Origin: Ascidiella aspersa
Lineage: Eukaryota
DNA: 64,000 nt
Direction of reading: 5' to 3'
Assembly: GCA_963924565.1 (NCBI GenBank)
Contig: OZ004614.1
Location: 26,474,001 to 26,538,000, forward strand
Part shown: positions 4,327-64,000 of the stretch, piece by piece
How the letters are laid out: every line of letters begins with the position of its first letter
How positions within the stretch are numbered: position 1 is the stretch's first letter
Program-made: the position numbers and the translations under genes
The notes under the pieces: generated by a model
Seen by the model: only the letters and a program-made list of their open reading frames with translations
Databases searched by the model: none
Told to the model about the DNA's origin: nothing

Positions 4327-7300
4327 GTGATGACGTGGTATACGATGGAGCAGAACTGGAAGTTTGGTCGCTCGAGAAAGTTGAAGATGCAGATCTTGAG
4401 GATGCGGAGTCTGGACTTGCGCTTGGATGGGACGGTGAAGTAGATGGGCTTCCCGTGCAAAGACATCTTACGCTTCCTGTACGGGACAGGGGGTGTGTCG
4501 GAGGTGTGGCCCCAGGGGGTGGGCACTCGGAGAAGCTGCAACAATAAGTCGTAAGCTGCAGACACAAGAAATTTCAGGGAAATATTTAATAAAGAGCGAA
4601 AGATTTTTAAGTCGTGAAATTATCTGTTGGTAACTTAATCACTCCTACCATCATTGAATTACAAACTGTTTTATAATAAAGCAAGGTTGTGCGAAAGTTT
4701 GCGAATTTATACAAATTGTTGTTAATAGTATCACAATATAAGTTGTTTTTTCAAGTAGTAATAAAACGTGTGTAGCATTTGTTTCTACTGTTTGTTAAAT
4801 GTTGAAATTAAACTTAAAAATTGCTTATTGTGTGAAATCCAACTTACGGTTGCGGCGAGAGAAGGTCTCCTACCGCTTCGGATATTGTGCTTTCCTCTCG
4901 ACGAATCATCGTTTGACACGTCATCAGTATGAGGATGGTCGGAAGTGAGATACTGGAAGTGAACAGGGCTCGAAATTACGGAGGCTTATTGCAGGAGTCG
5001 AAATTACAAGGCGGACATATTACAGGGATCGAAATTACAAGGCGGATCTGTTGCAGGGGTTAAAATTACGAGGCGGATTTATTGCAGGGTTTGAAATTAC
5101 AAGGCGGATTTATTGCAGGGCTCGAAATTACAAGGCGGACATATTACAGGGGTCGAAATTACAAGGCGGACATGTTACAGGGTTTGAAATTAAAAGGCGG
5201 ATTTATTGCAGGGCTCGAAATTACAAGGCGGACATATTACAGGGCTCGAAATTACAAGGCGGATTTATTGCAGGGCTCAAAATTACAAGGCGGACATGTT
5301 ACAGGGCTCGAAATTACAAGGCGGAGCTGTTGCAGGGGTCGAAATTACAAGGCGGATCTGTTGCAGGGGTCAAAATTACGAGGCGGATTTATTGCAGGGC
5401 TCGAAATTACAAAGCGGATTTATTGCAGGGTTCGAAATTACAAGGCGGATTTATTGTAGGGCTCGAAATTACAAGGCGGATTTATTGCAAGGCTCGAAAT
5501 TACGAGGCGGATTTATTGCAGGGTTTGAAATTACAAGGCGGATTTATTGCAGGGCTCGAAATTACAAGGCAGGCATGTTACAGGGGTCGAAATTACAAGG
5601 CGGATCTGTTACAGTGGCGAAATTACAAGGTGGGCATATTACAGGGTTCGAAATTACAAGGCGGATTTATTGCAGGGCTCAAAATTACAAGGCGGACATG
5701 TTACAGGGGTTGAAATAACAAGGCGGATCTGTTACAGGGGTCGAAATTTTATTGCAGGGGCTCGAAATTACGAGGCGGATTTATTGCAGGGTTCGAAATT
5801 ACAAGGCGGATTTATTGCAGGGCTCGAAATTACGAGGCGGATTTATTGCAGGGTTCGAAATTACAAGGCGGATCTGTTACAGGGGTCGAAATTACGAGGC
5901 GGATTTATTGCAGGGCTCGAAATTACAAGGCGGATCTGTTGCAAGGGTCGAAATTACAAGGCGGATTTATTGCAGGGCTCGAAATTACAAGGCGGATTTA
6001 TTGCAGGGCTCGAAATTACAAGGCGGATTTATTGTAGGGCTCGAAATTACAAGGCGGAAATATTACAAGGGTCGAAAATACAAGGCAGATCTGTTGCAGG
6101 GGTCGAAATTACAAGGTGGGCATATTACAAGGGTCGAAATTACAAGGCAGATCTGTTCCTGGGGTCGAAATTACAAGGCGGATGTATTGCAGTGCTCTAA
6201 ATTACAAGGTGGGCATATTACAGGGTTTGAAATTACAAGGCGGATCTGTTGCAGGGGTTGAAATTACTTTACATAACCCCTTTGACAAGTAAATGAAAAG
6301 TTGTTTCAAAAAATGTTTTGCAATTTACTAAACCTGACGTAATTGCAAGTTGTCGTTGCTGAAGTAAAGCAACATTTTGGGCTACATATGGTGGTTAATA
6401 AAAGCAAAACTTAACTTAAATTTCGCATATTTTCATTTAAACTATTTTGTTGAACTGACAAAACGATGCTATGTGATCATTTTAAAATATTGCATATCGG
6501 AACAAACAAAGAATCGTGCATTCCAGGTGAGAACAATTTAACATAAGAACCTTCTTGTTTGGGTTGAGATTAAGAATGTTGTGAAATAAATTTATATTTA
6601 AATTGCTGCTTACTTTAAATGTCAAGAAGCGCCTAAAATATTCATGCGGCGGCAAAATGGCCTTTAAACTTCTAAAATCGATGTTGGGCGAAAATGACAC
6701 GAGAGTGAATTGTCTCCAACGTCTGCCAGATGCTAAGCTTTTAAAGGCTAAGGTGCGAAGATGTACCCAAATGAAATGCAATCGCCCGAAACCCTTATTG
6801 TTAATATTTTGCGAACATGAAAAAAGGGGAATTTGAGTTCAACTTTATATGCGCTTTGTTTCATTGTTACACATTACACAAAAATACAAAAAAGAAAAAA
6901 GTAACTTGTCCTTTCCTATGTGAGCCGCTTTATTGAAAAGCTAGTGATTCGCACATTTTCACTTGCCACCGCTTATTTTCACACCGTTGTACAAACTGCG
7001 TTAAAAGCACTTAACGTTGAAAGGTTCTTGATGAGCCTGAAGCAATGCGAGGATAAGTGGCAGGATTGTAAATCACAAGAGTTTCTGGTTATAAAGACAA
7101 ACAACAACAACAGCCGACCACAGCCGGGGAATATGGCTAACTTGCAAATCTCCCGTAAGCCCACCTTAAGCCTACCAAACATAAATAACTATAGGTAACA
7201 AGTTAAAGACCTTAACTGTAAACTAAAGCTTTTAGATCTATAATATTGTTTGCTGCAAGGATTTGTAGCTAAGATGAAAAACTAGTATAACCCTCTAAAG

Positions 7301-7792
7301 TTATCACTTTCCAGGATTAGGTTAGTATTTAAAATCTTAAAGTAATAAATAATTGGTTAAAACTATTTTTCCACCAGAGTTAAAATCTAACCCGTTTAAG
7401 TCGTTGTTAAAATTACCAGCTATAAACCTCAAATTTATTTTCGTCAAATTTACCGGAAGTTCAAGAATTGCCTATATTGGAAGAAACCGTAAAACCATTT
7501 TTTTAATACGTAATAAGAATATCAAAGCCCATACAGAAGTAGGTATCATTTTGAACGTTTCAAAATAAATAAAGAGTTATTCGAAACGTCCAAAATGATA
7601 CCTACTTATGTATGGGCTTTGATATTCTTATTACATCTTACTACAACCTCCAACCATTATGCTCCTTAAACAATCTCTAATTATTTTATTTACCGGAAGT
7701 GCGCTTGGAAACTGCAAGCTTCGGGGAGTTTCCCTTATGTCGTCATCAATGTCGTCATCATCGAACACCTCAGCAAACGTCACACGTGACAT
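4327..7792 (-). CDS. KCNQ: KCNQ (Kv7) voltage-gated potassium channel, first three coding exons (gene continues beyond window start)
   Basis: Exons 7792-7694 (MSRVTFAEVFDDDDIDDDIRETPRSLQFPSALP), 4952-4848 (YLTSDHPH...GRRPSLAAT) and 4535-4327 (LLRVPTP...RKMSLHGKPIYF...RLRILKICIFNFLERPNFQFCSIVYHVI). GT/AG boundaries join in phase 0. MSLxGKP and NFLERP...YH are the KCNQ pre-S1 motifs. The third exon is supported by family motifs; the first two only by splice signals and phase. Confidence 0.8.
4964..6267. repeat. 31-bp minisatellite (~42 copies) in a KCNQ intron, abutting the acceptor of coding exon 2
   Basis: Unit ~GGGCTCGAAATTACAAGGCGGATTTATTGCA. On the - strand it ends ~11 nt before the exon starting at 4952. 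Confidence 0.95.
7509..7665. mobile_element. Dispersed hairpin repeat family (core GAATATCAAAGCCCATACAGAAGTAGG)
   Basis: Full hairpin here and at ~6-173; single arms at ~510-580, 1851-1930 and 26510-26618; a degenerate copy at ~52883-52998. Confidence 0.85.
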
Positions 7793-9640: not shown

Positions 9641-10135
9641 GATATATGGGAGCAAATTCTAGCAAAGTTCACTGTTTTGCGTCGAAACATTGTAAAGTGT
9701 GTTGGTAGCGTTAAAACAACAACAAAGTAGCTCACAAAGTGTCAGTGATATTTTGGGCCAAAAGTTCGTAAACTTGAACTTGATCTTTACGCCATCGACT
9801 TTGCGCGTTTTAATATCACCAAATATCGCTCATTTTTGACACCGAACAAACATTACAAGCCGGTCGCTAATTGATCAAAAATGTAGGTACGCTATCGCCT
9901 TGCAAAATCGACATATACTTGGGTGCCTAGAAAGGTGACAATTTAAAGGCGCTCTGATATATGGGAGAAATTCTAAAAACTTCACAGTTTAACGTGGAAA
10001 CATTATTAAGTGTGTTAGGCGTGTTAACACAACAAAGTATAAAGATGTCAGTGATATTTTCGGGTCAAAAAACAAAGACATAACGTTATTTGGAACATCG
10101 CCATATACTTGGCTGTTAACAAAGGCGACATTATG
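9641..10135. repeat. Diverged local tandem duplication (~316-bp period)
   Basis: GATATATGGGAG..AAATTCTA, AAGTGTGTT, TGTCAGTGATATTTT and CATATACTTGG occur in the same order starting at ~9641 and ~9956. Confidence 0.8.
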
Positions 10136-13100: not shown

Positions 13101-13612
13101 CCAGAGTTTGGATCAAATTTCGGGTAAAAGGGTGAAACTGGTGGGTACAAACATGGGGAATCCCCTACATGACTGCTCGGGTGAGACCAACACCACAGGT
13201 TCTTTACGTTTTAGCTCGGGGAAGCGTTGTGGAAACGTCAAGATGCCAGTGCTGTTTCAAAATACAGGGAACTTAAGACTTTATGTAAATCTTCCTGTAG
13301 TTTGTATTTACGCCATTTTCTAATAAATTAAGCGTAAGGCAAGTTAAAACAAAGATTTAACAATTAAAGATTAGGCTTTTTGAATTAGGAAAATCGTTAA
13401 CAGGAGTTAGGCTCAACGCTTAATTTAAAAGCTAACTTAATTACACAAAACCTTAATTAAGTTTCGTTTGATTAACTGACTGATTACTTTTAAAGTTACT
13501 TCACTGCAATGTATTGGGTGTTCTTTAAACATACAGAAGTGTATGCAGTTTTAACAACTTCAAGTTAAATGTTTTACTTTTGTCACTTGGTAACTAACTT
13601 TTTGTCTAAACC

Positions 13613-13676
13613 CTTCACATTACGTCACACAAATTCTTCACATTACGTCACACAAATACTTCACATTACGTCACAA
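13613..13676. repeat. 23-bp tandem repeat, 3 copies
   Basis: CTTCACATTACGTCACACAAAT(T/A) x3. Confidence 0.85.
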
Positions 13677-18492: not shown

Positions 18493-18500
18493 CCCTAGAT

Positions 18501-22458: not shown

Positions 22459-22620
22459 AATGAAAGACACATACAAACATATGTGTTTAATAACATCCGT
22501 GATCTAGCCCCTCGGAAGTTGCTTTATGACCAACGATTATGGCTTCCGTATCAATAGCAACTTCCGAGGGGCTAGATCACAGATGTTATTAAACACATAT
22601 GTTTGTGTGTGTCTTTCATT
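22459..22620. repeat. Near-perfect inverted repeat (~66-bp arms, ~30-nt loop)
   Basis: AATGAAAGACACATACAAACATATGTGTTTAATAACATCCGTGATCTAGCCCCTCGGAAGTTGCT and its reverse complement with 2 mismatches. Confidence 0.9.
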
Positions 22621-45100: not shown

Positions 45101-48100
45101 CTAAAGTCCAGTACTTGTCGAAAAACTGTAGGATTCTTCGATATTTGGTGGGAATTGAGGAATCGTTCCGCGAACTTTTCCGCGACCGCTGCGTTCCGTG
45201 TTTGTCCTCATCGCTCGAAATTTCTCCCTCCAAGCAACGAACTCTGCAACTGTAAGAACATTTGTTAACATTTCATAACGTTGTGTGGAATAATGACCTG
45301 GAAAAACCGTTAACAACACAAACTAGACGAAGATAGGTAATATGTTGAGTGTGTTCAGCAGATTGTTGTTCATTACTGGGGGTATGTTGTTTTGAAGCGA
45401 TCCAGTAGAAATGCCCCTGGTCGTAATAAATGCATTGAAATATCTTAAACGGACCCACTACCAGTTTAATTAAATGCTTGCTTCAACATCTCACCGTCCT
45501 TGTTTCTTCTTCCCGCCTTCCCTCCGTCTTTTACCGGCCACCTGGAAGTCGTTCACGATCGGCTTGAAATGCACGTGAAGCACCATCACGGTCATCATGA
45601 GGTTTACCCCGAGAAGTCCCATGCATATCACGAAGTAAACTCCTAAGTATGGACCGGTGGATGCCGGGAACATCTCACCAACAGCGAGAAGGAATACCTG
45701 CAATATTAAAAGGAATTTACTACGTGAGCGTATCGTGACTTACCATGAACGTGAGCATTATCGTGATGTATCTTGATTTACCATGAATGTGAGCATTATC
45801 GTGATTTACAGTATCGTGATTTACCATGAACGTGAGCATTATCGTGATTTACCATGAACGTGAGCATTATCGTGATGTATCTTGATTTACCATGAATGTG
45901 AGCATTATCGTGATTTACAGTATCGTGATTTACCATGAAGATGAGCAGTATCGTGATTTACCATGAAGATAAGCAGTATCGATATTTACCATGATCGTGA
46001 GGAGTATCGCGATTTACCATAAACTTGAGCAGTATCGTGATTTACCATGAACGTGAGTATCTTGATTTACCATGAACGTTAGCAGTATCGTGATACACCA
46101 TGAACGTGAGCAGTATCGTGATTTGCAGTATCGTGATTTACCATGAACGTGAGCAGTATAGTGATTTACCATGTACATGAGCAGTATCGTGATTTACCAT
46201 AAACGTGAGCAGTATCGTGATTTACCATAAACGTGAGCAGTATCGTGATTTACCATAAACGTGAGTAGTATCGTGATACACCATGAACGTGAGCAGTATC
46301 GTGATTTACCATGAAGATGAGCAGTATCGTGATTTACCATAAACGTGAGCAGTATAGTGATTTACCATAAACGTGAGCAGTATCGTGATTTACCATGAAC
46401 GTGAGTAGTATCGTGATACACCATGAACGTGAGCAGTATCGTGATTTACCATGAAGATGAGCAGTATCGTGATTTACCAAGAACGTAAAAGGTATCGTGA
46501 TTTACCATGAACGTGAGCAGTATCGTGATTTACCACGAACTTGAGCAGTATCGTGATTTACCATGAAGGTAAGCAGTATCGTGATTTACCATGAACGTAA
46601 AAGGTATCGTGATTTACCATGAACGTGAGCAGGATCGTGATTTACCATGAACTTGAGCAGTATCGTGATTTACCATGAGGATGAGCAGCATCGTGATTTA
46701 CCATGAACGTGAGCAGTATCGTGATTTACCATGAACGTGAGCAGTATCGTGATTTACCATGAAGGTGAGCAGTATCGTGATTTACCATGAACTTGAGCAG
46801 TATCGTGATTTACCATGAACGCAAAAGGTATCGTGATTTACCATGAACGTGAGCAGTATCGTGATTTACCATGAATGTGAGCAGTATCGTGATTTACCAT
46901 GAACGTGAGCAGTATCGTGATTTACCATGAAGGTGAGCAGTATCGTTATTTACCATGAACGTGAGCAGTATCGTGATTTACCATGAACGTGAGAAGTATC
47001 GTGATTTACCATGAACTTGAGCAGTATCGTGATTTACCATGAACGTGAGCAGTATCGTGATTTGCAGCCCGATCCTCTCCCCAGAGTCTGGAGGTAGGTA
47101 GAATCCCAGCAGAGCTACAGTTGTTAGGATGACGCTTGGGAAAAGCATGCTTTGCATATAGAGTGAAGAGTTTCTACGAAGCACAACTGTGAACGCAACC
47201 TAAAAACAGAGCAGATATTTTATGAAGGCCTGAGAAACGATTAATGTTTATTGGGTTCCCTAGAGTACTGGTGAGAAGAATCTGTTTATTTTAAGTAACC
47301 AACCCTCGAACCACGAATATTAACAATTTGCCAAGCACTCTTAAACCAAACCATTTCCGCTATATGATGGGTTGTACCAGCTTTGTTATTGCACTCACCT
47401 CTGCAAACATACTGTCGGTGATAGTGAAGTTGTTGTTAGCTTTTGTGTCGAGTTGCTGAGTGGCGGTGACCACCAGTGGACCGTGGTGTTCAAAGTGCAC
47501 TTCATCGTCCCCCGTCCCACTAACAACAACAAGGTAACATTAATTGTTGATATTGGTGACAGTGATAAGTGTTTATTCCAAAGAAGTTGTGCGCTTTGTT
47601 ATAAAGGTTGTGTCCTGGCATTATTTACATGTGCGTACAGCTCTATGCATTGTCTCCAATGTACTCATGCTTGTCGAACTGCCCACGATATTTAAACTCG
47701 CATTAACGTTTATTTAGCTCCATTATATGCACTAATACCACACGTCTGCGTCCCCAATGTTCTCGGTTCGCATAACGTGTCCTCACCTCCCTTCATCAGT
47801 GTCGTTGTGCGAGCTTGCGTTGTGTAAGCTTGCGTTGCTCGATGCTTTCGTGCTCAGGATCAACGACCCGTAGTCGCGCACCTGAAACACAAACCATCTA
47901 AACCTAGCAGTGAAATGTTAGACAGCTGGCTGTGAATCAAGCGGTCAAACAAGGGGTCTATTTAAAGAACTACGATAACTGACACAATAAGCAACAAATT
48001 ATATGCGGAATAAGCAGCTTTCTGCAAACTTTCCACAATGCATTTAGGAAGTCACTTCTAACTTTCTGTTATTGAAAAAAGTGATTTGTTCGACTCACGT

Positions 48101-51100
48101 TCTTCTTGACGCTGATCCCCGCCAACCTCCACTCGCCGGTGTTGATGAAGAATCGATCTGTGTCTTCCTCCAACTTCAAACTGCTTCGGTCGCTTGAAAG
48201 ATCGATCCGGGAGATCGGCTGCGACCATGACACGAAAGTCATGTGACACACCTGCCAACAATACACTCTGTTACGTCACTACATGGAAGTCATATGACAC
48301 ATCTGCCAACAATAGACTCTGTTACGTCACTACACGAAAGTCATGTGACACACCTGCCAACAATACACTCTGTTACGTCACTACATGGAAGTCATATGAC
48401 ACACCTGCCAACAATACACTCTGTTACGTCACTACACGAAAGTCATGTGACACACCTGCCAACAATACACTCTGTTACGTCACTACACGAAAGTCATGTG
48501 ACACACCTGCCAACAATACACTCTGTTACGTCACTACACGAAAGTCATGTAACACACCTGCCAACAACACACTCTGTTACGTCACTACATGGAAGTCATA
48601 TGACACACCTGCCAACAATACACTTTGTTACGTCACTACACGAAAGTCATGTGACACACCTGCCAACAATACACTCTGTTACGTCACTATTCCGCGTGTT
48701 TTAAAATATTGGTTAATTGAGTTGTATGGTTGAATTAAGAATAACAACTTGTTGATTAAAGGGATGAAGTTTGTACTCTTGTGTCAATATCGTGTTGCGA
48801 CTTTCCTAGTTTAAATTCTTGGCAGATGGAGTTTAGTTTTGTTTGAACTTTTATGTTTTCGGAAACTAAATGAGCTGTGACTTGTTAAATACTGGAAAGA
48901 AACGTCCAACGCTGATTGGTGTTCTACAGCTACTTCAGTATCGTACTCTAGGGTTACCAAGAGTTGTTCGTTGCACCTGAACATCGAAGGGGAAGAAAGC
49001 TGTGTCGATGCTGCAAGAAGTCTCGAAAGCGCTCGGCTCCTGGTACTTCACTGTTCCGTCATAAACGACCTGTACGTGGACGAGTCGTGGGGGGTAGCTC
49101 CTGCTGCCAACCTCCTCGTAAACAACAATGTCCGGGAACCAGATCAACTGGTGCGGGATCTCAACTGAACAAGTGGGACAGGGATGGTAGTAACACTATA
49201 CTGGAAGCCGTGCTATCATTAGTGTTCGACTTACTTCGCCCTGGAGCCCGTGTAGCTCAGCTGGTAGATCGACAGTCCCGGTATGGTCAAGGTTGTGAGT
49301 TCGAATCCCACCACAAGCTCGTGTATTTTGCTGGACTAATTTCGGGTAAACAGCCAAAGGGACTCGGTGTATTTCATACCCACGTTTGTGGTTATGATCG
49401 TTCCGTATGATTTAAAACTTTCAGATCGCATTTTATTCATGTCTAGCGATTTCAAAACAGCAGCTTTAGAAATCCAGTGGCATGAAGTAAGCAAAAATAT
49501 TAAACGAACATAAGCTATTTCAACCAATAGTTTCCCTTACTTTCTTTGATGCCACCAAATTCCTCAGGATTCCAAACAAACTGATAATCCTTCCAAACAA
49601 CTCGATACCAAACCAAACTCTTCAAAACCTGGTTCTTTTCGTCCAAATCTAACACCTGAAGAAGAAAATCAATCATTAATTCGATGTGATGTTAACATTC
49701 ATCGATTACATGAGCGTTTCTTAAACTGTCAGTTTTGTTCACCCCTGGCATCAAATGCTGCGTTTCAATTCACCCAAATAAATAAAACCGTCGCAACTGT
49801 CCATAAGCGTCATTGGCATGAGCACCAGTATGTGCGAGGTATTTGTGGGTTGCTTGTTGTACCACATTTCTTCTGGTATTAAACAATTTTGATGTTGGTT
49901 TGATTTGTGCAAGTTTCTGAGCACAGAAATATAAAAAAAAATCATTCACCTGTTACACAATTGATTGGTTAATCCTTGTAAAATTACCCACCCTTGGTCG
50001 AACCATTCTGTAGTTTAATAAACACTGGGTTGCATCTCACATGCGATGCATTGGCCTGGTTATCAAATGATGCATATTTACGGGCGTAATGTAAACGTTG
50101 AAGCAAATTTGAGGTTTACACAAAACACTGCAGCCACCTGTTGAGGTTAGAGATGTGGAAGCAGATAAGGAAGCTACTTACGGGATTTCTCTTAGCGGCC
50201 AATCACGCTTCTTTATTTTCTTTCACATAACGTGATCTCGCATGAATAATGGAAAGCTCAAAGATTGTCCGGAACCTTAGGAAGGTGGTTTATTTTGCGA
50301 CAAACACGAAATATATTACTCATATATTTAAACGTATAGTTCGACTAAACCCACTAAAGTAACACGATCCTTAGAAGCCAATAATACTTCCATCTGTCAG
50401 TTAATTTAAACCACTTAAAATGTTCTATATTTATGTGAAGCCTGCAAGTGATATCTTGCTGGAACCTTCAACACACCTTTGGTTTTAACCCGAACTTAAC
50501 ACTTGCGGTGAAATAACGCCTTAAACCACTTTGTTGTTTCAGTAACCTTAGTACAAAGTGTGACCTGATGTAAACCTTATCTCTAGCTGTTATTTTTACC
50601 TCGAATTAAACAAAGGCCGCACTTTGAACAACCCGAGCATTTTGTGATCTATCACTGTCGCTGTTGTGTTAGTTTGTGCTGATTTTATGTCAGCTCATTA
50701 AACTTTTACTAAATGCGCAACGCAGGAAGTAAGAGCGCAACCATTAAACGCAAATACTAAAAGCACCTGGGCTCTACATTTCGTTACAACCACTTAACAA
50801 CTTTACATTTTGCCATAATTTAAAAATTTCAACATAAACGATTTAACTTCGTTTAACTTCATTGAACACTTTTATAGAAAAAAAGTATATAAAAAATACA
50901 GTCCGTTTTAGGTGCTGCCACCTAGTGAAGAACTTACCTGTCTATAGGTGAATCCGACTTTAATGAGGATGTTTTCTTTATAGTCGTAGACAGGGGGCAT
51001 TGTTGCGTCATAGCCGTCCAACAATGCGCGCTTGAGTCGTTGCACGGGCGAGTCTGATTCACTCCCATTGTTGTATTGCTTGTTCTGACTGCGACTCAAA

Positions 51101-54100
51101 CTCGAAGTGTCTGGGAAGTAGAAGGTGATTATTGAGAGTCGGTTAAAGTGAGCCGAGCGTTCCGGGTAATAATGTGATTTCCCACCAAGCCATCAACTTG
51201 GATATATTTAGGCTAATACTTCATTTGCATATCTGTGCACGTCATCGAAACGTTTCCTGAGGTCTTTCAAGCGTCCCGTTATGACGTAACTTTGACGCCA
51301 TCTTAAAAAGTTCAAGCGTCCCGGTAAAAAAAAATAATTTCCTGCTTATTATAAGATTAAAGTAGAAGTAAAGATTGGGGTCGCAATTTCAATTCGGTTC
51401 ATGATTACTTTTGATTGGCGAGATCCAACTGAACATACAGAACCCCGGGAATGGCACTTCAACAAAAACACGTTTTCGTGATAATTGCATTAACGTCTAA
51501 CAGTGTTATTTGGAATGGTTATTGAAAACATATTGCGTGGGTTCATCCGCGTTCGTGAGTTCGAATCCCGCCAACACCACCAGTGCAAAGTATCTGTTGT
51601 GTTGTAGTGCATTGTGTTGCAGTGGAGTTTATGGCTTTCCAGTGAATGCGCCGACCTTATGCCAGTGAACCTGAAACTTCGAGGAATTTACGGCATATAC
51701 ACCTGAGGAAATCCCACCACAATAGTGTAAACGCAACAAGGTCGACCTTGCAATTCCATAAAAACGTAATTTCCTGCATTGGGTCGACGCTTGTATGTTT
51801 GCTGTAAATATTACAAACACTTTCCCACCCATGGGACCAATTAGAATCCCATAATCTATTTCTATTACGTTCTAAGTCAAGTTGCTCTTTCAACCTAATT
51901 TAGTGTTGCTACTTGGAAGTTGCGATAACGATGGATGGAAGCAACTTGACCGCAATGTTCCTTGGTATTAAGTGGCCGCTAAGTAAGAACTAAATTTAGT
52001 GGAAAGAATCCAAACAGGAAAAACGAAAATATTGAGTAAGACACGCCCAGCAGTTGGAAATTGTTGTATGATCTCACCTTTAACTGCGTTGAAGCTTGCG
52101 CCATTGACTTGCGTTGTTTTGACGAGGCTTCCTTTTGAGGCGGCGTTCCCGGCGAACGAATGCCCACATTGCCGCAGAATTAACAACACAACCACGATAA
52201 GTGGAGCTAGCCGCATCTTACTGGACGCAAAGTACTTGAATGTCATACAAGCGAGGTCTGAAGGTTATGCGAGGATAAACCACATTGGCTGGCTCAGTCA
52301 CATTTTTTTCTTGCCTTTGATATTCAAGAAAACCTCGGCCTTATCTGCCTCTAAACTTACATTACATCGAATATAATTTTGGAGGCTTCTCTTTTGAAAC
52401 AAACTAAATCTTTATTTGCTTTTCTGTCGGTAATTTTAAAATGTTTTTCCCATTTGATCTACATTGTGGGGAGAAAAAAAGAGTGTTTCCGTTAATTATT
52501 TTGTAAAACAGTCAAATAGTATTTGCGCGTTATTCTTGATTGTGAGTTAAAACGAGAAAACAGCTATCGAAGCGCAACGCCTGATTTTTCACTAAAGTAG
52601 TTGCTGACATCCGCTAAAAAAGAACACTTATTAAATAGTTAGGCTTTTATCTTGCTTATTTGGATATGATATGCACATACACGCCAGAAGCACTGTTGCT
52701 AAGTTGCAATTATAATGTATTCGTGTTCGTGACGCCCGTTTAGTGGAACGGAAGTGGTGGATCAATCGCTGCCTTCACATCTATTCGCCGTCTTACTTGG
52801 TGCTTGTCACATCGGGCAAATAGAGGAATGTCTCCAGCGTGGATTGCCAAATGTATGTTACACTACGGTTAACCCAAATACAGTAGGAATAATATGAAAG
52901 GCCATATAGATTCTATAGAACTATTGGTAACTTTTTTTACTACTGTGTTTGCTTTGATATTCTTACTACGTCCAACGAAAAATTCAGTCATTATGCTCCA
53001 AAGATAACTAATTACTTCATTAAACTAGGTGCAGTAAAACCAACTAAGCTTTCTTTGATAAATGTTTGTTAAAATACACTTGTGTAAGAATTGAATCCAC
53101 AAACTACAACCATCGTTCAACCATACCTAACGTTATGCCCCTATGTATACTTGGTATAGCACGTTACTGCTCAATAAGCTCGTTATACTGGGTTCTGCCA
53201 ACATGAACATGCACCAGCAGCTCCCAAGATACCTCTGCTACTTACAAACGCGCACGATTCAACCTTCAAGCAAATGTTACTTTCCCGCAGCCTGAGTGTA
53301 GCGATCCCCACTAAGTTACATCTGCTTCGAACAAAGTTAAAACGTGTTGCAAGTGGCACGAACTGTCCGCCCTGTTAAGGCGCACCGGGGTTCTCGGGAA
53401 AATCGTTACTTTCAAGTCACGTTTTACATAAATTCGCTGCAAATGTGCTAAGATGCCTTGCAACAACCGAACACCAAATCAACATCACTTTGCTTTGTTG
53501 GCGTTTCCCACAAAGCGTTACTTCCCCTCGTCTACCAGTCTGTCATCTCAACGCACCATTAATACTTCACGCGACCCACGAATATATGCGACCCGTGGAA
53601 ATATGCGAGCCGTGAAAATATGCGAGTCAAGTTTGTTTTTGCAGCGAGTGAAAGTTACAACTTTCTGTTTTATTTGTTCACTGACGGACTTTACTTTGCT
53701 GTGATATCTACGGTGAGCAAGCTGAGCATTCGTTGTTTGGTGGAAAACCTTAAAGATCTATTTGTATAAGGCCTTGACCTCATTAATATTGCAACACAAG
53801 GATCACACAACCGCGCATTTTCACGTTTATAGCGCACTTAAGCATCTGAGTGTGATGCTGAAACCTCATTTGTGCGTTGAACCTGACTCACACATAAAAT
53901 TAAAAATATAAAGCACGTAAATCAACATTGAAAGCAAAACAACTTGAGCTCCAATATTCCAAATATGGTAAGTTTTAAATCTCCCGTTTAACCACAGTTG
54001 TGATATAGTTTAACCACAGTTGTGATATAGTTCTAACAATAAGCTTAATGCCTTTGATGCTTATCCGCTTGTGCTCGCTGCACAACTTCCCACACAAGGA

Positions 54101-57100
54101 TTGTTGTTCCTTTTCAAAAACCTCGACCGCTGTCCATCTGTTACGTCACTGACGTGCTTTTCCTCCCGTCTATTGTGACGTCCTCAATAAAGCGCTGGTC
54201 ACCTTCGACTTATTAAGGTGCTATAAATATGTTCGGCTATATTTAACACTGACCTGTTTGGTCTCGTCTAAATAGGTTTGTAAACAACCAATTGTCCACC
54301 TTTCAATTTACAATTGTTCGCTCTTTGTGACGTAGAAATGGCGCAATTTCAAAAGTAAACAAATTCGTTTCGTTTGGAATAGGGTAAACGCGCATAATAT
54401 TTAACGCAAATATTCTTTTTAGTAAATATAAATATACTTTTAAAGTTTCCGCATTTTTTCGCGCTATTAACTAACTACATTGTGACGCAACAACGTATAG
54501 AGCGCGAAACATCTGCTACAAGTTTTTCTAAGCGGCGTATTATTCCTAACTTCGCTGTATCATTAGGACGTGCGTACAAAGGGATAATTAGATAACTAAA
54601 TAGATTGTAACTTAATGTTGTTGCATTCAACTTTCAGCAGAAATGCCTCCCTACCCGCAAATGTATTGTTTAAACGAAACTGTTTCCTCTTTCAACCAAC
54701 GAACCCCGTTCATAATTAACCTTCTCGACCAACCAAACCGATTTTTCTTCACAGGTGGTCGGCGATCGGTTGGCCGAAGAAGTTGGAAGATCAGATGGAA
54801 GCTACTTACAGCACTTTGAACGAACTTGAGGAACATTTCCACAAACTACAGCTGGGAGACCAGAACAACTTCCAGGACAGATTGGACACTCTGCAGGTGG
54901 CACATGCGCCCAGCTACCAAACCTACACTACCCCCCTAACCAACCAATACTAACCCAGCTATCCAAATAGGCATAGGCAGAGTTAAACATTAGCGATATA
55001 CATTTGCTACTGATTACCAATTTATCGACTGATATGTTTGGTTGAGTTGTGTACTTTTACGTATTATATTTAGATGTTTGGTTGTGTAGAGCGTGTTTAT
55101 TGTGTTTAGATGCTTGTTGCTGGGTTCGCCGCCCACAACGAGATCAGCAAAGCTCACGAGGTTGCCAACGAAGTTCGTCGCATCAACAAACAACTCAAGG
55201 AATGCCAGGGACTTGCTCAGGTTTACAACCAGAGAGAGAGGTTATTCGGGATGCCGGTCACCAACGTAAGCTAACAACTATTTGTATTCCGCAGAATGCA
55301 ACACGTTTATGCATTGGGCGTTTTTTTTAATGTTTTCAGATAAACTTTTGTGTTATCGGTGTTATTTTACAAAGTACGTTTGACGCGCGTTGTTTTTCGA
55401 CTTTCAAGCTTCAATATTCCTGTTTTGTTATTTCCTCGGCTTTCGATTACACGAGCTATTGCGTGTGCATCCATCCATGACCGTTCCAATGCCGCAAAAA
55501 TTTGACAAAAACCTCGCAGTGTGACGTCATAGAGACAATCGCGCGTCGGCCGAAACTGCTTCGGTGAGCTTGAAACAACGAAGTTCAGCGTGGCATTAGT
55601 TGTTGCCTCGTAATGTAACTTGGTATTATAGTTGCCTTTTAGAATGTTATTTGATGTTCTAACATCGAGGTTACTTTTGATACGCCGTATGTTCTTTATA
55701 CCATAAGGTTGGTTTAACAAACGCAAAGCATAACTTGGACATTCCCTCACAAGTGTAAAGCATTGGGGAACAAAATGCACTTATGTGAGGCTCAGTGGCG
55801 CCATGTAGCGGCAGTCGTATAAATATTTTCCCACCGCGAGGTTTTTGTTGAGTCTTTTTCGAAATTCCTGATCCTTTCACGAGGCTTGTCGTTCTCGGGT
55901 TGGGGTTTTACCCATCGCTGCTTTGTTCACTCGTGCGTGAAGAAGGGTGACGTCACGTTATCCTAATGATGACGTAACTTGCCTCTTCTTGACGTTATGC
56001 TGTGTTACGACGTATGATGTTCACAGACGCAGATTGCAAATTTCACTTTTTCACGTCAACTAGTTGATAGTGACGCTGTCATCCCCATTTGTTCATTGTT
56101 CATGTTGCCAGGATTAATGATCGTGGTTATTCTCGAAAAACTATTATTCTCACCCCTTTACTTGAGATCGGTTTGTGACAGAAACCAATTTGTTCAGTCT
56201 GTCTCTAGCTCTCACAACTTTAACCCTTCGTTAAACTTGTGGCGTGTAGTTAAACATAGAAATGCATTCATTATCAACGTTTAACATTGTTTTGTTTTTT
56301 CTACATTCGTCATTTCACTCATAATCTTTTAGTTTCGTAGTTTCTGTAGTTTATTTCATTACGTCATCATCTCGTAACTACGTCATCGTTCTTTTTTACA
56401 CAAATCATCATCTACCCTGACTTCATCCATGTGACGTCATCCATCTTGACTTCATCCATGTGACGTCATCCATCCTGACTTCATCCATGTGACGTCATCC
56501 ATCCTGACTTCATCCATGTGACGTCATGCAATCGCGGTTGTGACGTGATACGTGGTGACAACAGTACGATAAGCTGAGCAAGTTGGTGAAAGACTTCCAA
56601 CCTTACCGTGACCTTTGGACGACAACTTCTGATTGGATGAGGTGGCACGAGTCATGGATGAATGACCCGCTGACGTCAATCGACGCCGAACAAATGGAGC
56701 GGAGCGTGAACGACAGCTTCAGAGTTCTTCACAAATGCGCCAAGCAGTTCAAGGAGATTCCTGGTAAGATTGAAATTATATTTAATTATTGCGAATATAT
56801 AAAAATTATCTTTTATATTTGTTTTACATGGAAAATAATGATGGTTTAATATTGTTAGACGTGTCATGAAGGTTTAATATTGTTAGGCGTGAACTACGTG
56901 TACTTAGAATTTTAGATTAAGAAGTGTCGGCTTTTTACTGTTAATGTGCAGTAGTTTTAGAGCTGCTTGTGTGTTAGGCGTGCAGCAAGTTGCCCTGCAA
57001 GTGAAGGGAGACGTGGATGGGTTCAAACCGTTCATCCCACTCATACAAGGATTGCGCAACCCTGGCATGAGGATAAGGCATTGGGACGCTCTCTCCAAGG

Positions 57101-60100
57101 AACTTGGGTTCTCCGTTCAACCAAAGGTATAAACATACCGTGTATAACTTGGCTGATAAATCAATTGTTAGGATCAAATGCTTTTCTAATTTTTTTCATC
57201 GATTAAATATCTCAAGTTTTATGTTGTTTCCAGCTTACAGATTATAATCAATACAGGTCCATGATACGATGCTGCATGACCAGGTTTATTGTTGCCTCTA
57301 AAATTATTATAACTATTTTTAAAACAAGTGTATTTTTTCTTTTTTCGTTTGACCAAACGTGACAAAACATTTTTAATTGTTTTTTTGGTACATTAAAACT
57401 AAATTAAAGCTAACAGCAATAATTTAATTGATGCAATTCTTTATGTTACTCTAAAACATTTTCCGTCTTTTATGTAAGTGATAAATCTCTATTTAGCAAG
57501 TTGTAATCTCCCTGTTGATAGTTGTTACTGAGTGAGTGCTGTGTTGTGTAGGCGGCCTTGACCTTCAGCAAGTGCCTTGAGATGAACTTGGCTGATCACA
57601 TCGACAAGATCGCCAAAGTTGCCGAAGTTGCTGGGAAGGAATTCAGTATCGAGCAAGCTCTTGACAAGATGGAGAAGGAATGGGAACCGATCAATTTCGA
57701 GGTAAACCTTCAACATCTTCTACTGATAAATCCTATATTACCTTTGAGGTAAATCAAGTGTTTAAGATGCATTTTTGTATTTATTTGTTTATTTCAGCTT
57801 TTCCCCATAAAATAAGGTTTACTGGGATCCCCACAACTATCATTTCTAGAATTGGCACATTCCTTCAATAACCTTGTACCAATTTTCAAGGTGAAATCTT
57901 ACAAAGAAACCGGAACTTTCATCATAAAATCACCGGAAGAAGCGTCACAGTTGCTTGATGACCACATTGTGATGACACAAACGATGTCCTTCTCCCCTTA
58001 CAAGAAACCTTTCGAGGAGAGGATTGCTACTTGGGAGAGCAAGCTGAGCATGACGCAGGTAAAAAGCATGAGTCAGCAATCACGGTTTACCAATTTTTTT
58101 GACGTCAATCTTTTGATTTAACTTGGCGATGTAATAACCTCTTGTGACACTCACAAGTCGGCGTACGAAAACATCCTCTTGTTAGGCGTAAATAAATTTG
58201 TCACGTACGTGCGGTATAAATAGACTTATTTAAGTAGTATAATCTAATATAATTATATATATGTTATGATTCAAAACAATTAGTTATGTGCATAGCTTAC
58301 TATTTTCTGTTGAACAGGACGTGTTGTTGTTTATAGGACGTGTTGTTATTGTATAGGACGTGTTGGACGAGTGGTTGGTTTGCCAGCGATCGTGGCTCTA
58401 CCTCGAACCCATATTCAGCTCGGAAGACATCAACCGTCAACTCCCGGTTGAAGGGAAGCGATACCAGACCATGGAGAGGATGTGGAGGAAGCTCATGAAG
58501 AACGCAAACGACAACACACAGGTGATCACGCGCTCATCACGCAGGTGATCACGCGCTCATCACGCAGGTGATCACGCGCTCATCACACAGAGATCACGCG
58601 CTCATCACGCAGGTGATCATGCGCTTATCACGCAGGTGATCATGCGCTCATCACGCAGGTGATCACGCGCTCATCACGCAGGTGATCACGCGCTCATCAC
58701 GCAGGTGATCACGCGCTCATCACGCAGGTGATCACGCGCTCATCACGCAGGTGATCACGCGCTCATCACGCAGGTGATCACGCGCTCATCACGCAGGTGA
58801 TCATGCGCTTATCACGCAGGTGATCAAGCGCTTATCACGCAGGTGATCACGCGCTCATCACGCAGGTGATCACGCGCTCATCACACAGGTGATCACGCGC
58901 TCATCACGCAGGTGATCACGCGCTCATCATGCAGGTGATCACGCGCTCATCACGCAGGTGATCACGCTCTCATCACGCAGGTGATCACGCGCTCATCACG
59001 CAGGTGATCACGCGCTCATCACGCAGGTGATCACGCGCTTATCACGCAGGTGATCATGCGCTCATCACGCAGGTGATCACGCGCTCATCACGCAGGTGAT
59101 CGCGCGCTCATCACACAGGTGATCACGCGCTCATCACACAGGTGATCACGCGCTCATCACACAGGTGATCACGCGCTCATCACACAGGTGATCACGCGCT
59201 TATCACGCAGGTGATCACGCGTTAGATAAACCTTAGCAATTTGTGTAGCATGTCTTGAGCACTATTGTATTATTATTGTCTCCCATGTGATGTAAATTTT
59301 GCCTACTTTTGTAACTTTTACAAGTGTTATCAACAATATCTGCGTATTTCGCTCTGTTTATGTGAAGTTTCCCAGTTTTAAGTAATCTTTTCTAAGGTGA
59401 TTTCGCTGTGTTCGGACGCTCGGCTCCTTGAGAGCTTGAAGGAGTGCAACAAATTGTTGGAGCAAGTTCAGAAAGGACTGAGCGAGTATTTGGAGACGAA
59501 GCGAGCCTCATTCCCCAGGTGAGCCATCCGCTGGTTTGATCCGTCTTCCTCATTTTACTTTGTTCATCCTTAACTTCCACCTTCCAGGTTTTACTTTCTT
59601 TCCGATGATGAGCTTCTTGAGATTCTGTCGCAGACCAAAGACCCGACCGCCGTCCAACCTCATCTCAGGAAGTGCTTCGAGAATATATTCAAGGTAATTT
59701 AACACAAGTTTGACGCCATGTTAGAAGGGCTGTGAAACGTTTAAAACTAATATTCAGTTGGCTTTGTTGGCTTTAAATTGATGTTTTGAAGTTGTTTTAT
59801 AACGTCTTTTTTATTCAAAGTTGATCTCAATGTGAAATAGTACAAATAGTGGGTTGCCAATCACTTCTAAGACGAACTGTATTTGACTCCTCAACACTTC
59901 TGAGTTTAATTTACTCCACATCTATCAACTCGCACATTTTGTTGTCAGATCAAGTTTGAGTCTGACATGAAGATGACGGAGATGATCTCGGGTGAGGGCG
60001 AGCATGTTGCCTTCAGCGAGGATCTTTATCCCACAGGGAACGTGGAGGACTGGCTTGGTGAGGTGGAGAGAGTGATGATGCAGAGTGTGAGGATGCAATG

Positions 60101-63100: not shown

Positions 63101-63638
63101 TACCTCGCAATAAAAATACTGTTCAATAAAAGCACTTTTCAATTAAAATACTTTTATATCAAGGTTTCACTTTAAGATTATCGCTTGGCTCGAAATAAGT
63201 TTTGCCAATTATTTTTTAAAGGATAAATAGCTAACGTAAATTTATTTCAAATTATTCTATTTAATTATAAAAAGGTAGTTTATTGAAATATATATTGCCG
63301 TCATGCAGAGATCACAATAAAAAACAGTACTTTAGTGGGATTCGAACTTACGACCATACGAACACGCGACCACTGTCTCACTAACTGTGCTATCAAGTCA
63401 AAACTTGAAATTCCTGGGCACTTCAGCCACACATGCAAGTTCACAACTTGTTGTTCAGGTGGATGGTTTTGTGACCAAGTGTATCCAGTTGTACGAGACG
63501 ACTATTGTGAGGCACGGACTCATGTTGGTCGGACCAACTTGCTCGGGAAAGACAAAGTGCTACAACGTCCTCGCCAAAGGACTCACGCAACTCAAAGGAC
63601 AACCTTCCATCAGCGGCGGAAACTATGAGGCTGTTCAT
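33180..63638 (+). CDS. DNAH1: Dynein axonemal heavy chain 1 (inner-arm type), N-terminus through AAA1 into AAA2; gene continues beyond window end
   Basis: 36 coding exons: 33180-33317, 33910-34005, 34573-34645, 35039-35219, 35680-35969, 36361-36522, 36854-36989, 37387-37509, 37903-38060, 38405-38508, 38970-39080, 39584-39751, 39956-40127, 40599-40803, 41415-41513, 41935-42160, 42614-42816, 54755-54896, 55110-55265, 56565-56763, 56978-57126, 57552-57701, 57891-58058, 58357-58521, 59397-59518, 59588-59693, 59949-60162, 60516-60700, 60758-60840, 60979-61092, 61167-61404, 61641-61811, 62144-62233, 62495-62606, 62878-63092, 63459-63638. DNAH1-type N-terminal motifs [41 protein letters not shown]; linker [26 protein letters not shown]; AAA1 [34 protein letters not shown]; AAA2 GPTCSGKT. 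The first three exons rest on splice phase only. Confidence 0.95.
33333..33599. mobile_element. MITE in the first coding intron of DNAH1
   Basis: TIR core TGGAAAGTATGGCA / TGCCATACTTTCCA; repeated GGGTGCAC; 8-bp TSD TTTGGTGG at 33325-33332 and 33600-33607. Confidence 0.8.
43867..52246 (-). CDS. 5-HT3-receptor-like / nicotinic-type Cys-loop cation channel subunit (non-alpha), complete, 12 exons, ~731 aa, nested antisense in a DNAH1 intron
   Basis: Exons 52246-52078, 51110-50938, 49655-49541, 49164-48977, 48251-48099, 47881-47787, 47519-47399, 47199-47038, 45697-45495, 45249-44854, 44728-44530, 44088-43867 (2196 nt, phases consistent). Signal peptide; LDEKNQVL; WYRVVWKD; [10 protein letters not shown]; Cys loop [15 protein letters not shown]; TFVSW; GEW; M1-M2 [27 protein letters not shown]; M3 [14 protein letters not shown]; M4 [17 protein letters not shown]. 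No vicinal cysteines in loop C. Confidence 0.92.
45722..47063 (-). repeat. 28-bp minisatellite (~48 copies) made of an exon 3' end plus the 5' splice site
   Basis: - strand unit ATCACGATACTGCTCACGTTCATG|GTAA = codons ITILLTFM of the M2 helix plus the donor. The first copy lies in exon 47199-47038. Confidence 0.97.
48230..48689 (-). repeat. 51-bp minisatellite (9 copies) made of a 3' splice site plus the exon 5' end
   Basis: - strand unit AGTGACGTAACAGAGTGTATTGTTGGCAG|GTGTGTCACATGACTTTCGTGT. The last copy supplies the real acceptor and the start of exon 48251-48099 (VCHMTFV). Confidence 0.97.
49246..49345 (+). mobile_element. tRNA-derived SINE copy
   Basis: TAGCTCAGCTGGTAGATCGACAGTCCCGG...GTGAGTTCGAATCCC, colinear with the 22721 copy. 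Confidence 0.7.
56417..56527. repeat. 29-bp tandem repeat (~4 copies) just upstream of a DNAH1 acceptor
   Basis: Unit CTGACTTCATCCATGTGACGTCATCCATC, ending ~37 nt before the exon at 56565. Confidence 0.9.
58519..59221 (+). repeat. 23-bp minisatellite (~30 copies) starting exactly at a DNAH1 donor
   Basis: Unit CAG|GTGATCACGCGCTCATCACG. The first CAG is the last codon of exon 58357-58521. Confidence 0.97.
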
Positions 63639-64000
63639 GTGAGTTTGTAAAGTTGTTCATGTGAGTTGGTAAAGTTGTTCATGTGAGTTTGTAAAGTTGT
63701 TCATGTGAGTTTGTTAAGTTATTCATATGAGTTTGTAAAGTTGTTCATGTGAGTTTATGAAGTTGTTCATGTGAGTTTGTAAAGTTGTTCATGTGAGTTG
63801 GTAAAGTTGTTCATGTGAGTTGGTAAAGTTGTTTATGTGAGTTGGTAAAGTAGTTCATGTGAGTTTATCATTTGTTTATGTGAGTTTGTAAAGTTGTTCA
63901 TGTGAGTTGGTAAAGTTGTTCATGTGAGTTGGTAAAGTTGTTCATGTGAGTTTGTAAAGTTGTTTATGTGAGTTTGTAAAGTTGTTCATGTGAGTTGGTA
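63632..64000 (+). repeat. 22-bp minisatellite (at least 16 copies, truncated by window end) made of an exon end plus donor
   Basis: Unit TGTTCAT|GTGAGTTTGTAAAGT. The first copy overlaps the end of exon 63459-63638. Confidence 0.97.

What the first reader, a model, noticed from the sequence alone, without database searches (positions are those of the whole stretch)
4533..64000. Splice-junction-anchored tandem amplification as a window-wide system
Seen: four of the five long minisatellites are head-to-tail copies of an exon-intron boundary. These are donor arrays at 45722-47063 (28 bp), 58519-59221 (23 bp) and 63632-64000 (22 bp), and an acceptor array at 48230-48689 (51 bp). The fifth (4964-6267) abuts an acceptor. 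Unit sequences are unrelated to each other, occur in three genes on both strands, and always extend into the intron, leaving one functional junction at the exon edge. About a dozen other junctions show decayed 2-3-copy versions, while ~15 kb of intergenic DNA (8-23 kb) has no comparable long array. Established: tandem duplication of AG|GT-containing sequence is a proposed route to intron gain and new alternative splice sites. Inference: this genome has a mutational process targeted to splice junctions (e.g. transcription/spliceosome-coupled R-loops, or repair slippage at exon-intron composition boundaries), plus a splicing rule that picks the exon-proximal site from dozens of near-identical decoys. 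I cannot tell from the sequence whether this has already been described for this species.
Basis: partly seen in the sequence, partly recalled or inferred. Interest (0 to 1): 0.9.

Follow-up and report, generated by a model that had tools for sequence, protein, structure and literature searches.

The report
Splice-junction minisatellites ("mirages") near chromosome end
Four introns of two genes near a chromosome end are largely filled with tandem copies of their own exon-intron boundary; the arrays are real, but the kind is already known from lancelets as "mirages", and neither a junction-targeted mutation process nor a special splicing rule is shown.

Summary
Tandem Repeats Finder finds the five long arrays. 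In four of them the unit straddles a junction fixed by protein-family continuity. These are two donor arrays in an axonemal dynein heavy-chain gene, and one donor and one acceptor array in a Cys-loop receptor gene nested in a dynein intron. The fifth array lies next to an unverified exon.

RNA reads use only the exon-adjacent acceptor of a 3-copy mini-array. None reads on into the second copy of the 23-bp donor array. Every decoy choice gives an early stop codon, so nonsense-mediated decay (NMD) could hide misuse.

Paralogues and a related organism show that the introns predate the arrays, so these are not intron births.

This is the "mirage" type of minisatellite described for a few lancelet genes. 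The genome here has nine chromosomes and is not Branchiostoma floridae, so I file it as a new member of a known kind.

The window lies 52-116 kb from a chromosome end and is about 14-fold richer in long arrays than a random 180-kb sample. A genome-wide motif test and my small extra samples showed no junction enrichment, though both have low power.

The scan has noted the same pattern on other pieces of this genome; those notes are unchecked. A junction-targeted mutational process remains unproven.

The parts
58515..59221 (+). Donor array A1: 30 units of 23 bp, each 7 exon-like nt plus 16 intron nt. 29 of 30 units keep CAG|GTGA.
58357..58521 (+). Dynein heavy-chain exon whose last 7 nt begin array A1. 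Its donor is at 58521|58522.
   Evidence: Pfam DHC_N2 220-272. RNA joint into 58357, exon depth about 9x, and no read passes 58545.
58522..59396 (+). Intron of 875 nt, 80% of it array A1. The next exon starts at 59397.
   Evidence: Pfam DHC_N2 275-310 for 59397-59510; sequence
58316..58365 (+). Three-copy acceptor mini-array (ATAG|GACGTGTTG). Only the last copy, at 58356|58357, is used in RNA.
   Evidence: 6 joint reads plus 4 loose-end reads; the decoys give a stop or a frameshift
63632..64000 (+). Donor array A2: 22-bp units (TGTTCAT|GTGAGT...). It continues beyond the window to 64840, 55 units, and fills 97% of intron 63639-64881.
63459..63638 (+). Dynein AAA1 exon whose last 7 nt begin array A2.
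   Evidence: Pfam AAA_6 283-327; the next exon TNVLNPKSISMGQLYG lies after the array; paralogues
45729..47063 (-). Donor array A3: about 48 units of 28 bp on the minus strand (..TTCATG|GTAAAT..), with 39-44 intact donors. It covers 98% of intron 45704-47037 and the last 26 nt of the exon.
47038..47184 (-). Cys-loop receptor exon (TM1 to mid-TM2) ending ..QITILLTFM|. The 5' limit is approximate.
   Evidence: Pfam Neur_chan_memb; paralogues end the exon at the same residue
45491..45703 (-). Next receptor exon ([14 protein letters not shown]...). The acceptor is at 45704|45703. The 3' limit is approximate.
48230..48689 (-). Acceptor array A4: 9 units of 51 bp, each 29 intron nt with the acceptor plus 22 exon nt. 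8 of 9 units keep GGCAG|GTG.
48099..48251 (-). Receptor exon that starts with the second Cys of the Cys-loop (VCHMTF...). Its first 22 nt belong to the last unit of A4.
   Evidence: Pfam Neur_chan_LBD 140-196, following 81-139 in exon 48978-49147
48252..48977 (-). Intron of 726 nt, 60% of it array A4.
4964..6267 (.). Fifth array: 31 bp x42, 82% matches. It ends about 20 nt from a consensus minus-strand acceptor (TTCACTTCCAG|) of an unverified exon at 4849-4943. The junction is not inside the unit.
   Evidence: no Pfam hit for the neighbouring ORFs
56408..56527 (+). 29-bp x4 array inside dynein intron 55266-56564. It ends 37 nt before the acceptor and does not span a junction.
54755..58521 (+). 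RNA-validated stretch of the dynein gene. Its six internal introns are 54897-55109, 55266-56564, 56764-56977, 57127-57551, 57702-57890 and 58059-58356, all GT..AG.

Best explanation
These are junction-spanning minisatellites of the 'mirage' type.

In an intron that already existed, a short segment of 22-51 bp straddling the exon-intron boundary was duplicated in tandem. I infer replication slippage between short direct repeats as the cause. The duplicate was then amplified to 9-55 copies by further slippage and unequal exchange. This happened in a part of the chromosome, 52-116 kb from its end, that is unusually prone to such arrays.

The arrays grow on the intron side only, because copies on the exon side would break the reading frame. 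They persist because the copy still attached to the exon gives the only in-frame mRNA. Every decoy site gives a premature stop within about 40 codons, so any mis-spliced RNA would be removed by nonsense-mediated decay.

No process aimed specifically at junctions is needed. Junction overlap is favoured because the ancestral introns were short, roughly 50-350 nt outside the arrays.

Shown: the anatomy, the old age of the introns, use of the exon-adjacent site in RNA, and the stops in the decoys.
Inferred: slippage and unequal exchange, a role for chromosome-end recombination, and removal by NMD.
For: - Arrays and their registers.
- Junctions fixed by Pfam profile continuity.
- The introns are older than the arrays. 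Receptor paralogues L023 and L024 end the same exon at ..TFM|GT, with ordinary introns of 1061 and 348 nt. Dynein paralogue L038 has an intron at the same position and phase as A1. In a related organism (X4), a contig continues after the A1 donor with unique sequence in place of the repeat.
- RNA: all 10 informative reads use the exon-adjacent acceptor of the 3-copy array, and no read runs from the exon into the second A1 unit despite about 9x exon depth.
- All decoy donors and acceptors give early in-frame stops.
- The arrays are present in the reads of two further DNA runs, with word depth 2-11 times that of the flanks.
- The window lies 52-116 kb from the end of a 26.59-Mb chromosome. It holds 5 long arrays in 64 kb, against 1 in 180 kb of random sample, p about 0.006.
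- Tandem-array hits of both the donor motif and its control cluster toward chromosome ends.
- Higher-order periods of 56, 84 and 218 bp fit unequal exchange.
- The same kind of structure, with normal splicing, is described for lancelet Adh3, globin, troponin C and PGBD5 genes (PMC3087553, PMC3902484).
Against: - Under uniform placement, four junction-spanning arrays out of five is very unlikely (6e-6 to 2e-4).
- Even conditioning on introns of about 250 nt, the joint probability is about 0.002, by my own arithmetic from the intron lengths.
- Typical neighbouring introns are 190-430 nt, not tiny.
- Three of 16 other junctions also carry nearby copies, p = 0.01.
- The scan's earlier notes report the same pattern in at least seven other windows of this genome (unchecked).

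Together these leave room for a real junction bias that ordinary slippage does not explain.

Copy-number instability was not measured. No RNA was laid on the receptor arrays or on A2.
Confidence: 0.6

Rival explanations
1. A mutational process aimed at splice junctions seeds tandem duplications preferentially at exon-intron boundaries. Candidates are transcription- or spliceosome-coupled R-loops, or repair slippage at the composition boundary. A positional rule of splice-site choice then picks the exon-adjacent copy.
For: - Four of five long arrays span a junction, 6e-6 to 2e-4 under uniform placement.
- Three of 16 other validated junctions carry nearby copies, p = 0.01.
- All five long arrays lie in or beside genes, and none in 15 kb of intergenic DNA.
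- Earlier scan notes report the pattern elsewhere in this genome (unchecked).
- RNA uses the exon-adjacent sites.
Against: - The genome-wide count of tandem GGTRAGT triplets equals its reversed control (337 against 345; about 9 against 8 loci). The motif fits this organism's donors poorly, so the test is weak.
- No junction-spanning array turned up in 234 kb of other genome. One array lies in the interior of a paralogue's intron (L036), and one long array has no exon at its visible end (L006).
- The chromosome-end position offers a simpler reason for the local density.
- NMD explains the RNA picture without any positional rule.
Confidence: 0.17
2. The arrays are kept by selection because rows of decoy splice sites do something useful. 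They might bind U1 snRNP, act as recursive AG|GT splice sites, or tune expression through unproductive splicing.
For: - Decoy sites are well kept: 29 of 30 in A1, GT in all 55 units of A2, and 8 of 9 in A4.
- The A1 and A4 units carry AG|GT, the form of a recursive site.
Against: - Unit identity is high at every position, not just at the splice signals. That fits young or homogenised arrays rather than selection on the signals.
- The A2 and A3 units have no AG|GT.
- The array is absent at the A1 donor in the related organism X4 and in the paralogues.
- The units differ in sequence and length.
- No functional data exist.
Confidence: 0.08
3. The arrays mark newly born introns, created by tandem duplication of an exonic AGGT-containing segment (the Rogers model, proposed for mirages in lancelet globins).
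For: - The A3 unit is almost identical to the last 28 nt of its exon.
- A2 and A3 leave only 41 and 25 nt of non-repeat intron.
- The A1 unit begins like the downstream exon, GTGAT.
Against: - Receptor paralogues have an ordinary intron at the same residue.
- Dynein paralogue L038 has an intron at the same position and phase as A1.
- The related organism X4 has unique intron sequence at the A1 donor.
- No general resemblance exists between exon ends and intron ends.
- The age of the A2 intron is unresolved. The nearest paralogue's intron is offset by about 2 nt.
Confidence: 0.03
4. The arrays are assembly artefacts.
For: Tandem arrays can be mis-sized in assemblies. PMC3087553 reports one mis-assembled mirage.
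Against: - Contigs of two other DNA runs break exactly at the arrays. Unit-word depth is up to 11 times that of the flanks. One 4435-nt contig spans exactly the stretch between A1 and A2.
- The arrays are 0.4-1.3 kb, within long-read length (inference).
Confidence: 0.02

Closest known systems
'Mirage' minisatellites of lancelet genes (Adh3: Canestro et al. 2002, cited in PMC3087553; globins BflGb6 and BflGb9: PMC3087553; PGBD5 and troponin C: PMC3902484)
   Same: - Tandem repeats whose unit spans an exon-intron boundary and carries the splice signal.
- Either the 5' or the 3' boundary can be involved.
- The mRNA is spliced normally despite the extra sites.
- Units differ from gene to gene. The published range is 10-160 bp; here it is 22-51 bp.
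   Different: - The copy numbers are far higher: 30-55, against 3-6 for the lancelet globins.
- Two arrays fill 97-98% of their intron.
- Four arrays sit within 20 kb.
- The genome has nine chromosomes, and the conserved 26-mer of the B. floridae BflGb6 mirage is absent. It is therefore not that species and, from my memory of lancelet karyotypes (n = 18-20), probably not a lancelet.
- Length instability, shown for Adh3, was not tested here.
- The original 2002 paper is not in the library.
Internal tandem repeats at exon-intron boundaries of human genes in segmental duplications (PMC2812944)
   Same: Minisatellite-size units (about 30 bp) at exon-intron boundaries alter intron structure and can activate cryptic splice sites.
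   Different: - Those cases have few copies (about 4).
- They are read as intron formation from exonic repeats, often with both isoforms expressed.
- Here the introns are old, and only the exon-adjacent site is seen in RNA.
Intron gain by tandem duplication of an AGGT-containing exon segment (Rogers 1989, as cited in PMC2812944 and discussed in PMC3087553)
   Same: A duplicated segment supplies extra GT and AG signals. The A3 unit is almost pure exon sequence.
   Different: The defining feature, absence of the intron in relatives, was tested and not met for A1 and A3.
Subtelomeric minisatellite clustering (from my general knowledge of human minisatellites; not checked in a paper here)
   Same: Long arrays of units tens of bp long, concentrated near a chromosome end, with higher-order periodicity.
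   Different: Classical subtelomeric minisatellites are not tied to splice junctions.

Membership tests
Mirage minisatellites | Tandem array with a minisatellite-size unit (about 10-160 bp) | tested here: met
   Units of 22, 23, 28 and 51 bp, in 9-55 copies
Mirage minisatellites | The unit spans an exon-intron boundary and includes the splice signal | tested here: met
   7, 7, 26 and 22 exon nt lie inside the arrays. The junctions are fixed by Pfam profile continuity and by paralogues. Not met for the fifth array, 4964-6267.
Mirage minisatellites | Normal mRNA is made despite the duplicated sites | tested here: met
   Met for the dynein gene only. The exon-adjacent acceptor is used in 10 of 10 reads at the 3-copy array, and no read-through occurs into the second A1 unit. 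Not tested for A2, A3 or A4.
Mirage minisatellites | Length instability or polymorphism between alleles or cells | not testable with these tools
The only hint is a contig from the related organism X4 that lacks the array at the A1 donor.
Intron gain by tandem duplication | Intron absent at that site in paralogues or relatives | tested here: not met
   Introns lie at the same site in L023 and L024 (receptor) and in L038 (dynein). X4 has an intron at the A1 donor. Inconclusive for A2.
Intron gain by tandem duplication | Intron made only of copies of exon sequence | tested here: inconclusive
   The A3 unit matches the last 28 nt of its exon at 27 of 28 positions. The A1, A2 and A4 units are part intron, and A1 and A4 leave 175 and 288 nt of unique intron.
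Recursive (ratchet) splice sites | An AG|GT junction used as acceptor and then as donor, with intermediates in RNA | not tested
   The AG|GT motif is present in the A1 and A4 units. No reads were laid on the arrays.
Transposon-derived introns (introners) | Related copies dispersed in many genes; exon sequence repeated at the intron end as a target-site duplication | tested here: not met
   The units are unrelated to each other. No excess similarity exists between exon ends and intron ends across 8 introns. Dispersal in the genome was not searched.

The most novel reading that the evidence does not exclude
This lineage has a real, genome-wide bias that seeds and amplifies tandem repeats at splice junctions, coupled to transcription or splicing. 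Its spliceosome reliably picks the exon-adjacent site out of up to 55 identical decoys by position alone, not merely because NMD hides the errors.
Probability: 0.15. Interest if true: 0.8.

Novelty: new member of a known kind. Interest (0 to 1): 0.4.

Why it matters
Rows of 30-55 near-identical splice sites next to a real one are a natural experiment in splice-site choice. In-vitro work on competing identical 5' sites (my recollection, not checked in a paper here) tends to favour the site nearest the 3' splice site. Here that site would be the wrong one.

If the exon-adjacent choice holds when NMD is blocked, these loci would make that question directly testable.

The loci also show that such arrays can overwrite almost a whole old intron. 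That bears on how intron sequence and length turn over, and it warns against reading such arrays as intron births.

As it stands, the finding extends a little-studied phenomenon, known from a handful of lancelet genes, to another genome and to much larger arrays.

Tried and rejected
1. Genome-wide motif tests.
- Three GTRAGT motifs 12-42 nt apart gave 9163 matches against 20222 for the reversed control. The count is swamped by GTGA-type microsatellites.
- Three GGTRAGT motifs gave 337 against 345 matches, and about 9 against 8 distinct loci on chromosomes 1-3.
- No enrichment was seen. But counts are weighted by copy number, only 100 places are listed, and only 1 of 8 donors checked here fits GTRAGT. 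This is weak evidence.

2. Random genome sample. I did not use search loci as a back door for bulk sampling. The sample held one long array (L006), with no exon at its visible end.

3. Organism identity.
- The B. floridae BflGb6 mirage 26-mer, taken from the supplement of PMC3087553, has no match with up to 3 mismatches.
- Genome-note wording searches found nothing.
- The chaetognath and limpet papers did not match.
- The mitochondrial contig shows cox1 followed by cob, which I cannot place.

4. The original mirage paper (PMC117041) is not held.

5. 'Echo' idea: that intron ends generally copy the neighbouring exon ends. The observed mean equals the permuted mean over 8 introns. Rejected.

6. 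Intron birth: rejected for A1 and A3 (see the rival explanations).

- I laid window 52600-58545, which ends one unit into A1.

Exons were searched one by one by reference. Only short in-script joins were made, to check reading frames.

Full report
**What is there**

- 4964-6267, 31 bp x42
- 45729-47063, 28 bp, about 48 copies
- 48230-48689, 51 bp x9
- 58515-59221, 23 bp x31
- 63632-64000, 22 bp

The last runs off the window. In the genome it continues to window position 64840, 55 copies in all. The five consensus units are no more alike than shuffled units. Between 8 and 23 kb no array exceeds 82 bp.

**Genes**
- A plus-strand axonemal dynein heavy-chain gene runs from about 33 kb past the window end (Pfam DHC_N2 and AAA_6).
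- RNA reads join its exon ending near 42817 to the exon starting at 54755.
- A minus-strand Cys-loop receptor gene at about 43.8-52.3 kb (Neur_chan_LBD and Neur_chan_memb) is therefore nested in an 11.9-kb dynein intron.
- A pfkB-family kinase gene lies on the minus strand from 23.5 kb.
- The ORFs around the fifth array have no family match.

**Are the arrays at junctions?** Four are, and each is fixed by protein conservation.
- *A1.* Exon 58357-58521 matches DHC_N2 positions 220-272, and the exon from 59397 matches 275-310. The array starts 7 nt inside the exon, and 29 of 30 units keep CAG|GTGA. It fills 80% of the 875-nt intron.
- *A2.* Exon 63459-63638 ends ..TTCAT|GTGAGT. All 55 units keep the GT. 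The next exon (TNVLNPKSISMGQLYG..) begins 41 nt after the array, so 97% of the intron is array.
- *A3, minus strand.* The exon ends ..QITILLTFM|GTAAAT at 47038, and its last 26 nt are inside the array. 39-44 units keep the donor. Only 25 nt of the 1334-nt intron are not repeat.
- *A4, minus strand.* Exon 48099-48251 starts with the second Cys-loop cysteine and matches LBD 140-196, following 81-139 in the exon upstream. The 51-bp unit is 29 intron nt with the acceptor plus the first 22 exon nt.
- *Fifth array.* It ends about 20 nt from a consensus minus-strand acceptor, but that exon is unsupported.

**Chance**

With about 110 junctions in the window, the joint probability that four units of these sizes all span a junction is about 6e-6. 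With an impossible upper bound of 266 junctions it is 2e-4. If seeds are confined to introns of about 250 nt, my arithmetic gives about 0.002. If the ancestral introns were as short as the non-repeat remainders suggest, it is about 0.02. The window was also chosen after the fact. The pattern is non-random under uniform placement, but less striking under a short-intron null.

**Other junctions**

For 18 junctions validated by RNA or homology, I searched the adjacent 150 nt of intron for a near copy of the 18-nt junction probe.
- Five junctions score at least 13 of 18, against 2.9% of 5000 random positions.
- Without the two big arrays, that is 3 of 16, p = 0.01.
- The clearest case is the three-copy acceptor at 58316-58365.

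**RNA and DNA reads**

I laid window 52600-58545, which ends one unit into A1.
- The dynein gene is expressed from the plus strand. Six GT..AG introns are confirmed.
- At the three-copy acceptor, all 6 joint reads and 4 loose-end reads use the exon-adjacent copy at 58356|58357.
- Exon depth before A1 is about 9x, yet no RNA read reaches the last letter of the stretch. So none reads through into, or splices from, the second unit.
- The loose-end row for this donor was not printed, so the partner exon was not seen directly.
- Contigs of two other DNA runs break exactly at the arrays, with unit-word depth up to 11 times that of the flanks. One 4435-nt contig spans exactly the stretch between A1 and A2. 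The arrays are therefore not assembly artefacts.
- A contig of a related organism (X4, 99% or more identical where it aligns) continues after the A1 donor with unique sequence instead of the repeat. That sequence is not found in the window.

**Decoys are all unproductive**

Using any later donor of A1, A2 or A3, or any earlier acceptor of A4 or of the mini-array, gives an in-frame stop within about 40 codons (114 nt at most) or a frameshift. Steady-state RNA therefore cannot tell a positional splicing rule from removal by nonsense-mediated decay.

**Age of the introns**
- Two receptor paralogues end the same exon at ..TFM|GT and have ordinary introns of 348 and 1061 nt, without arrays.
- A dynein paralogue (L038) has a phase-0 intron at exactly the A1 position.
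- So A1 and A3 colonised old introns and largely overwrote them. They are not intron births.
- For A2, the nearest paralogue's intron is offset by about 2 nt, which is inconclusive.
- A general 'echo' between exon ends and intron ends is absent.

**Is it a genome-wide system?** Not shown.
- The genome has nine chromosomes of 26.6-41.0 Mb. The window lies 52-116 kb from the end of chromosome 8.
- In 180 kb fetched on a fixed grid, I found one long short-period array, against five in this 64-kb window, p about 0.006. Its visible end has no exon.
- In 54 kb of paralogue loci, the only array with 5 or more copies lies in the interior of an intron.
- Counts of three tandem donor motifs equal those of the reversed control. 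Both the motif hits and the control hits tend to lie near chromosome ends. The motif fits this organism's donors poorly, and the counts are weighted by copy number, so this is weak evidence.
- The scan's earlier notes report the same pattern in at least seven other windows of this genome. I did not test them.

**What is known**

Tandem repeats that span exon-intron boundaries yet leave splicing normal were named 'mirages' in lancelet Adh3. They have since been reported for lancelet globin, troponin C and PGBD5 genes (PMC3087553, PMC3902484). Related boundary repeats exist in human genes within segmental duplications (PMC2812944).

The present genome lacks the conserved 26-mer of the B. floridae globin mirage. 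Its nine chromosomes do not fit what I remember of lancelet karyotypes. The organism is coded in the tools and I could not name it.

**Verdict**

The arrays are real, striking examples of a known kind. The most likely mechanism is ordinary minisatellite birth and growth across the boundaries of old, short introns in an array-prone chromosome end. The arrays are tolerated because the exon-attached copy stays functional and every decoy is unproductive. A junction-aimed mutational process and a positional splicing rule are not excluded, and I give them about 15%.

Noticed in passing
window 42817-54755 (dynein intron) and 43800-52300 (minus strand): A Cys-loop (5-HT3/nicotinic-like) receptor gene is nested, on the opposite strand, in an 11.9-kb intron of the dynein gene. 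RNA loose ends at 54755 carry the end of the exon that ends near 42817.
   Followed up: partly
G000:C8, window = 26474001-26538000 of 26590166: The window lies 52-116 kb from a chromosome end. Long arrays are about 14 times denser here than in 180 kb sampled on a grid. Tandem-array hits of unrelated motifs also cluster toward chromosome ends.
   Followed up: partly
window 63340-63400, 49196-49357, 40861-41058; L002 and L003 (C1:9.74 and 9.79 Mb): tRNA-like, SINE-type segments. One lies just upstream of the dynein exon at 63459 and has 80%-identical copies on chromosome 1.
   Followed up: no
window 58522-58527, run X4: A contig from a related organism, 99% or more identical elsewhere, has unique sequence right after the A1 donor instead of the 23-bp repeat. 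This suggests the array is young or variable. It rests on a single low-depth contig.
   Followed up: partly
window 54842: C in the DNA is read as T in 4 of 31 RNA reads. The two DNA runs of the same organism show only C. This could be an allele or an edit.
   Followed up: no
L036 2063-2293 (C9:6.55 Mb): A 33-bp x7 array, 98% identical, lies in the interior of an intron of a dynein paralogue, 170 nt from the donor. It shows that not all genic arrays here are at junctions.
   Followed up: yes
G000:C1:2554690-2554818 and C1:5393114-5393332: Two distant loci carry arrays of related units of about 42 nt. Each unit holds both GTAAGT and a pyrimidine-rich ..GCAG, like a mini-intron. This may be a dispersed repeat family. 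It could not be fetched.
   Followed up: no
L026 (G000:C75:21817-26154): On the mitochondrial contig, cox1 is followed directly by cob on the same strand, and TGA is read as sense. The locus lies more than 23 kb into its contig, so the mitochondrial record is large or repeated. C10 (14,803 bp) is not the cox1 contig.
   Followed up: partly
L001 3536-3631 (window 65035-65130): The next dynein intron begins with a 27-bp x3.5 repeat (..TTGTAG|GT..), starting about 10 nt after its donor.
   Followed up: no
window 23528-23878 minus strand: This is the last exon of a pfkB-family (ketohexokinase-like) kinase gene (Pfam PF00294, E = 1e-14). Its gene has no long array.
   Followed up: no
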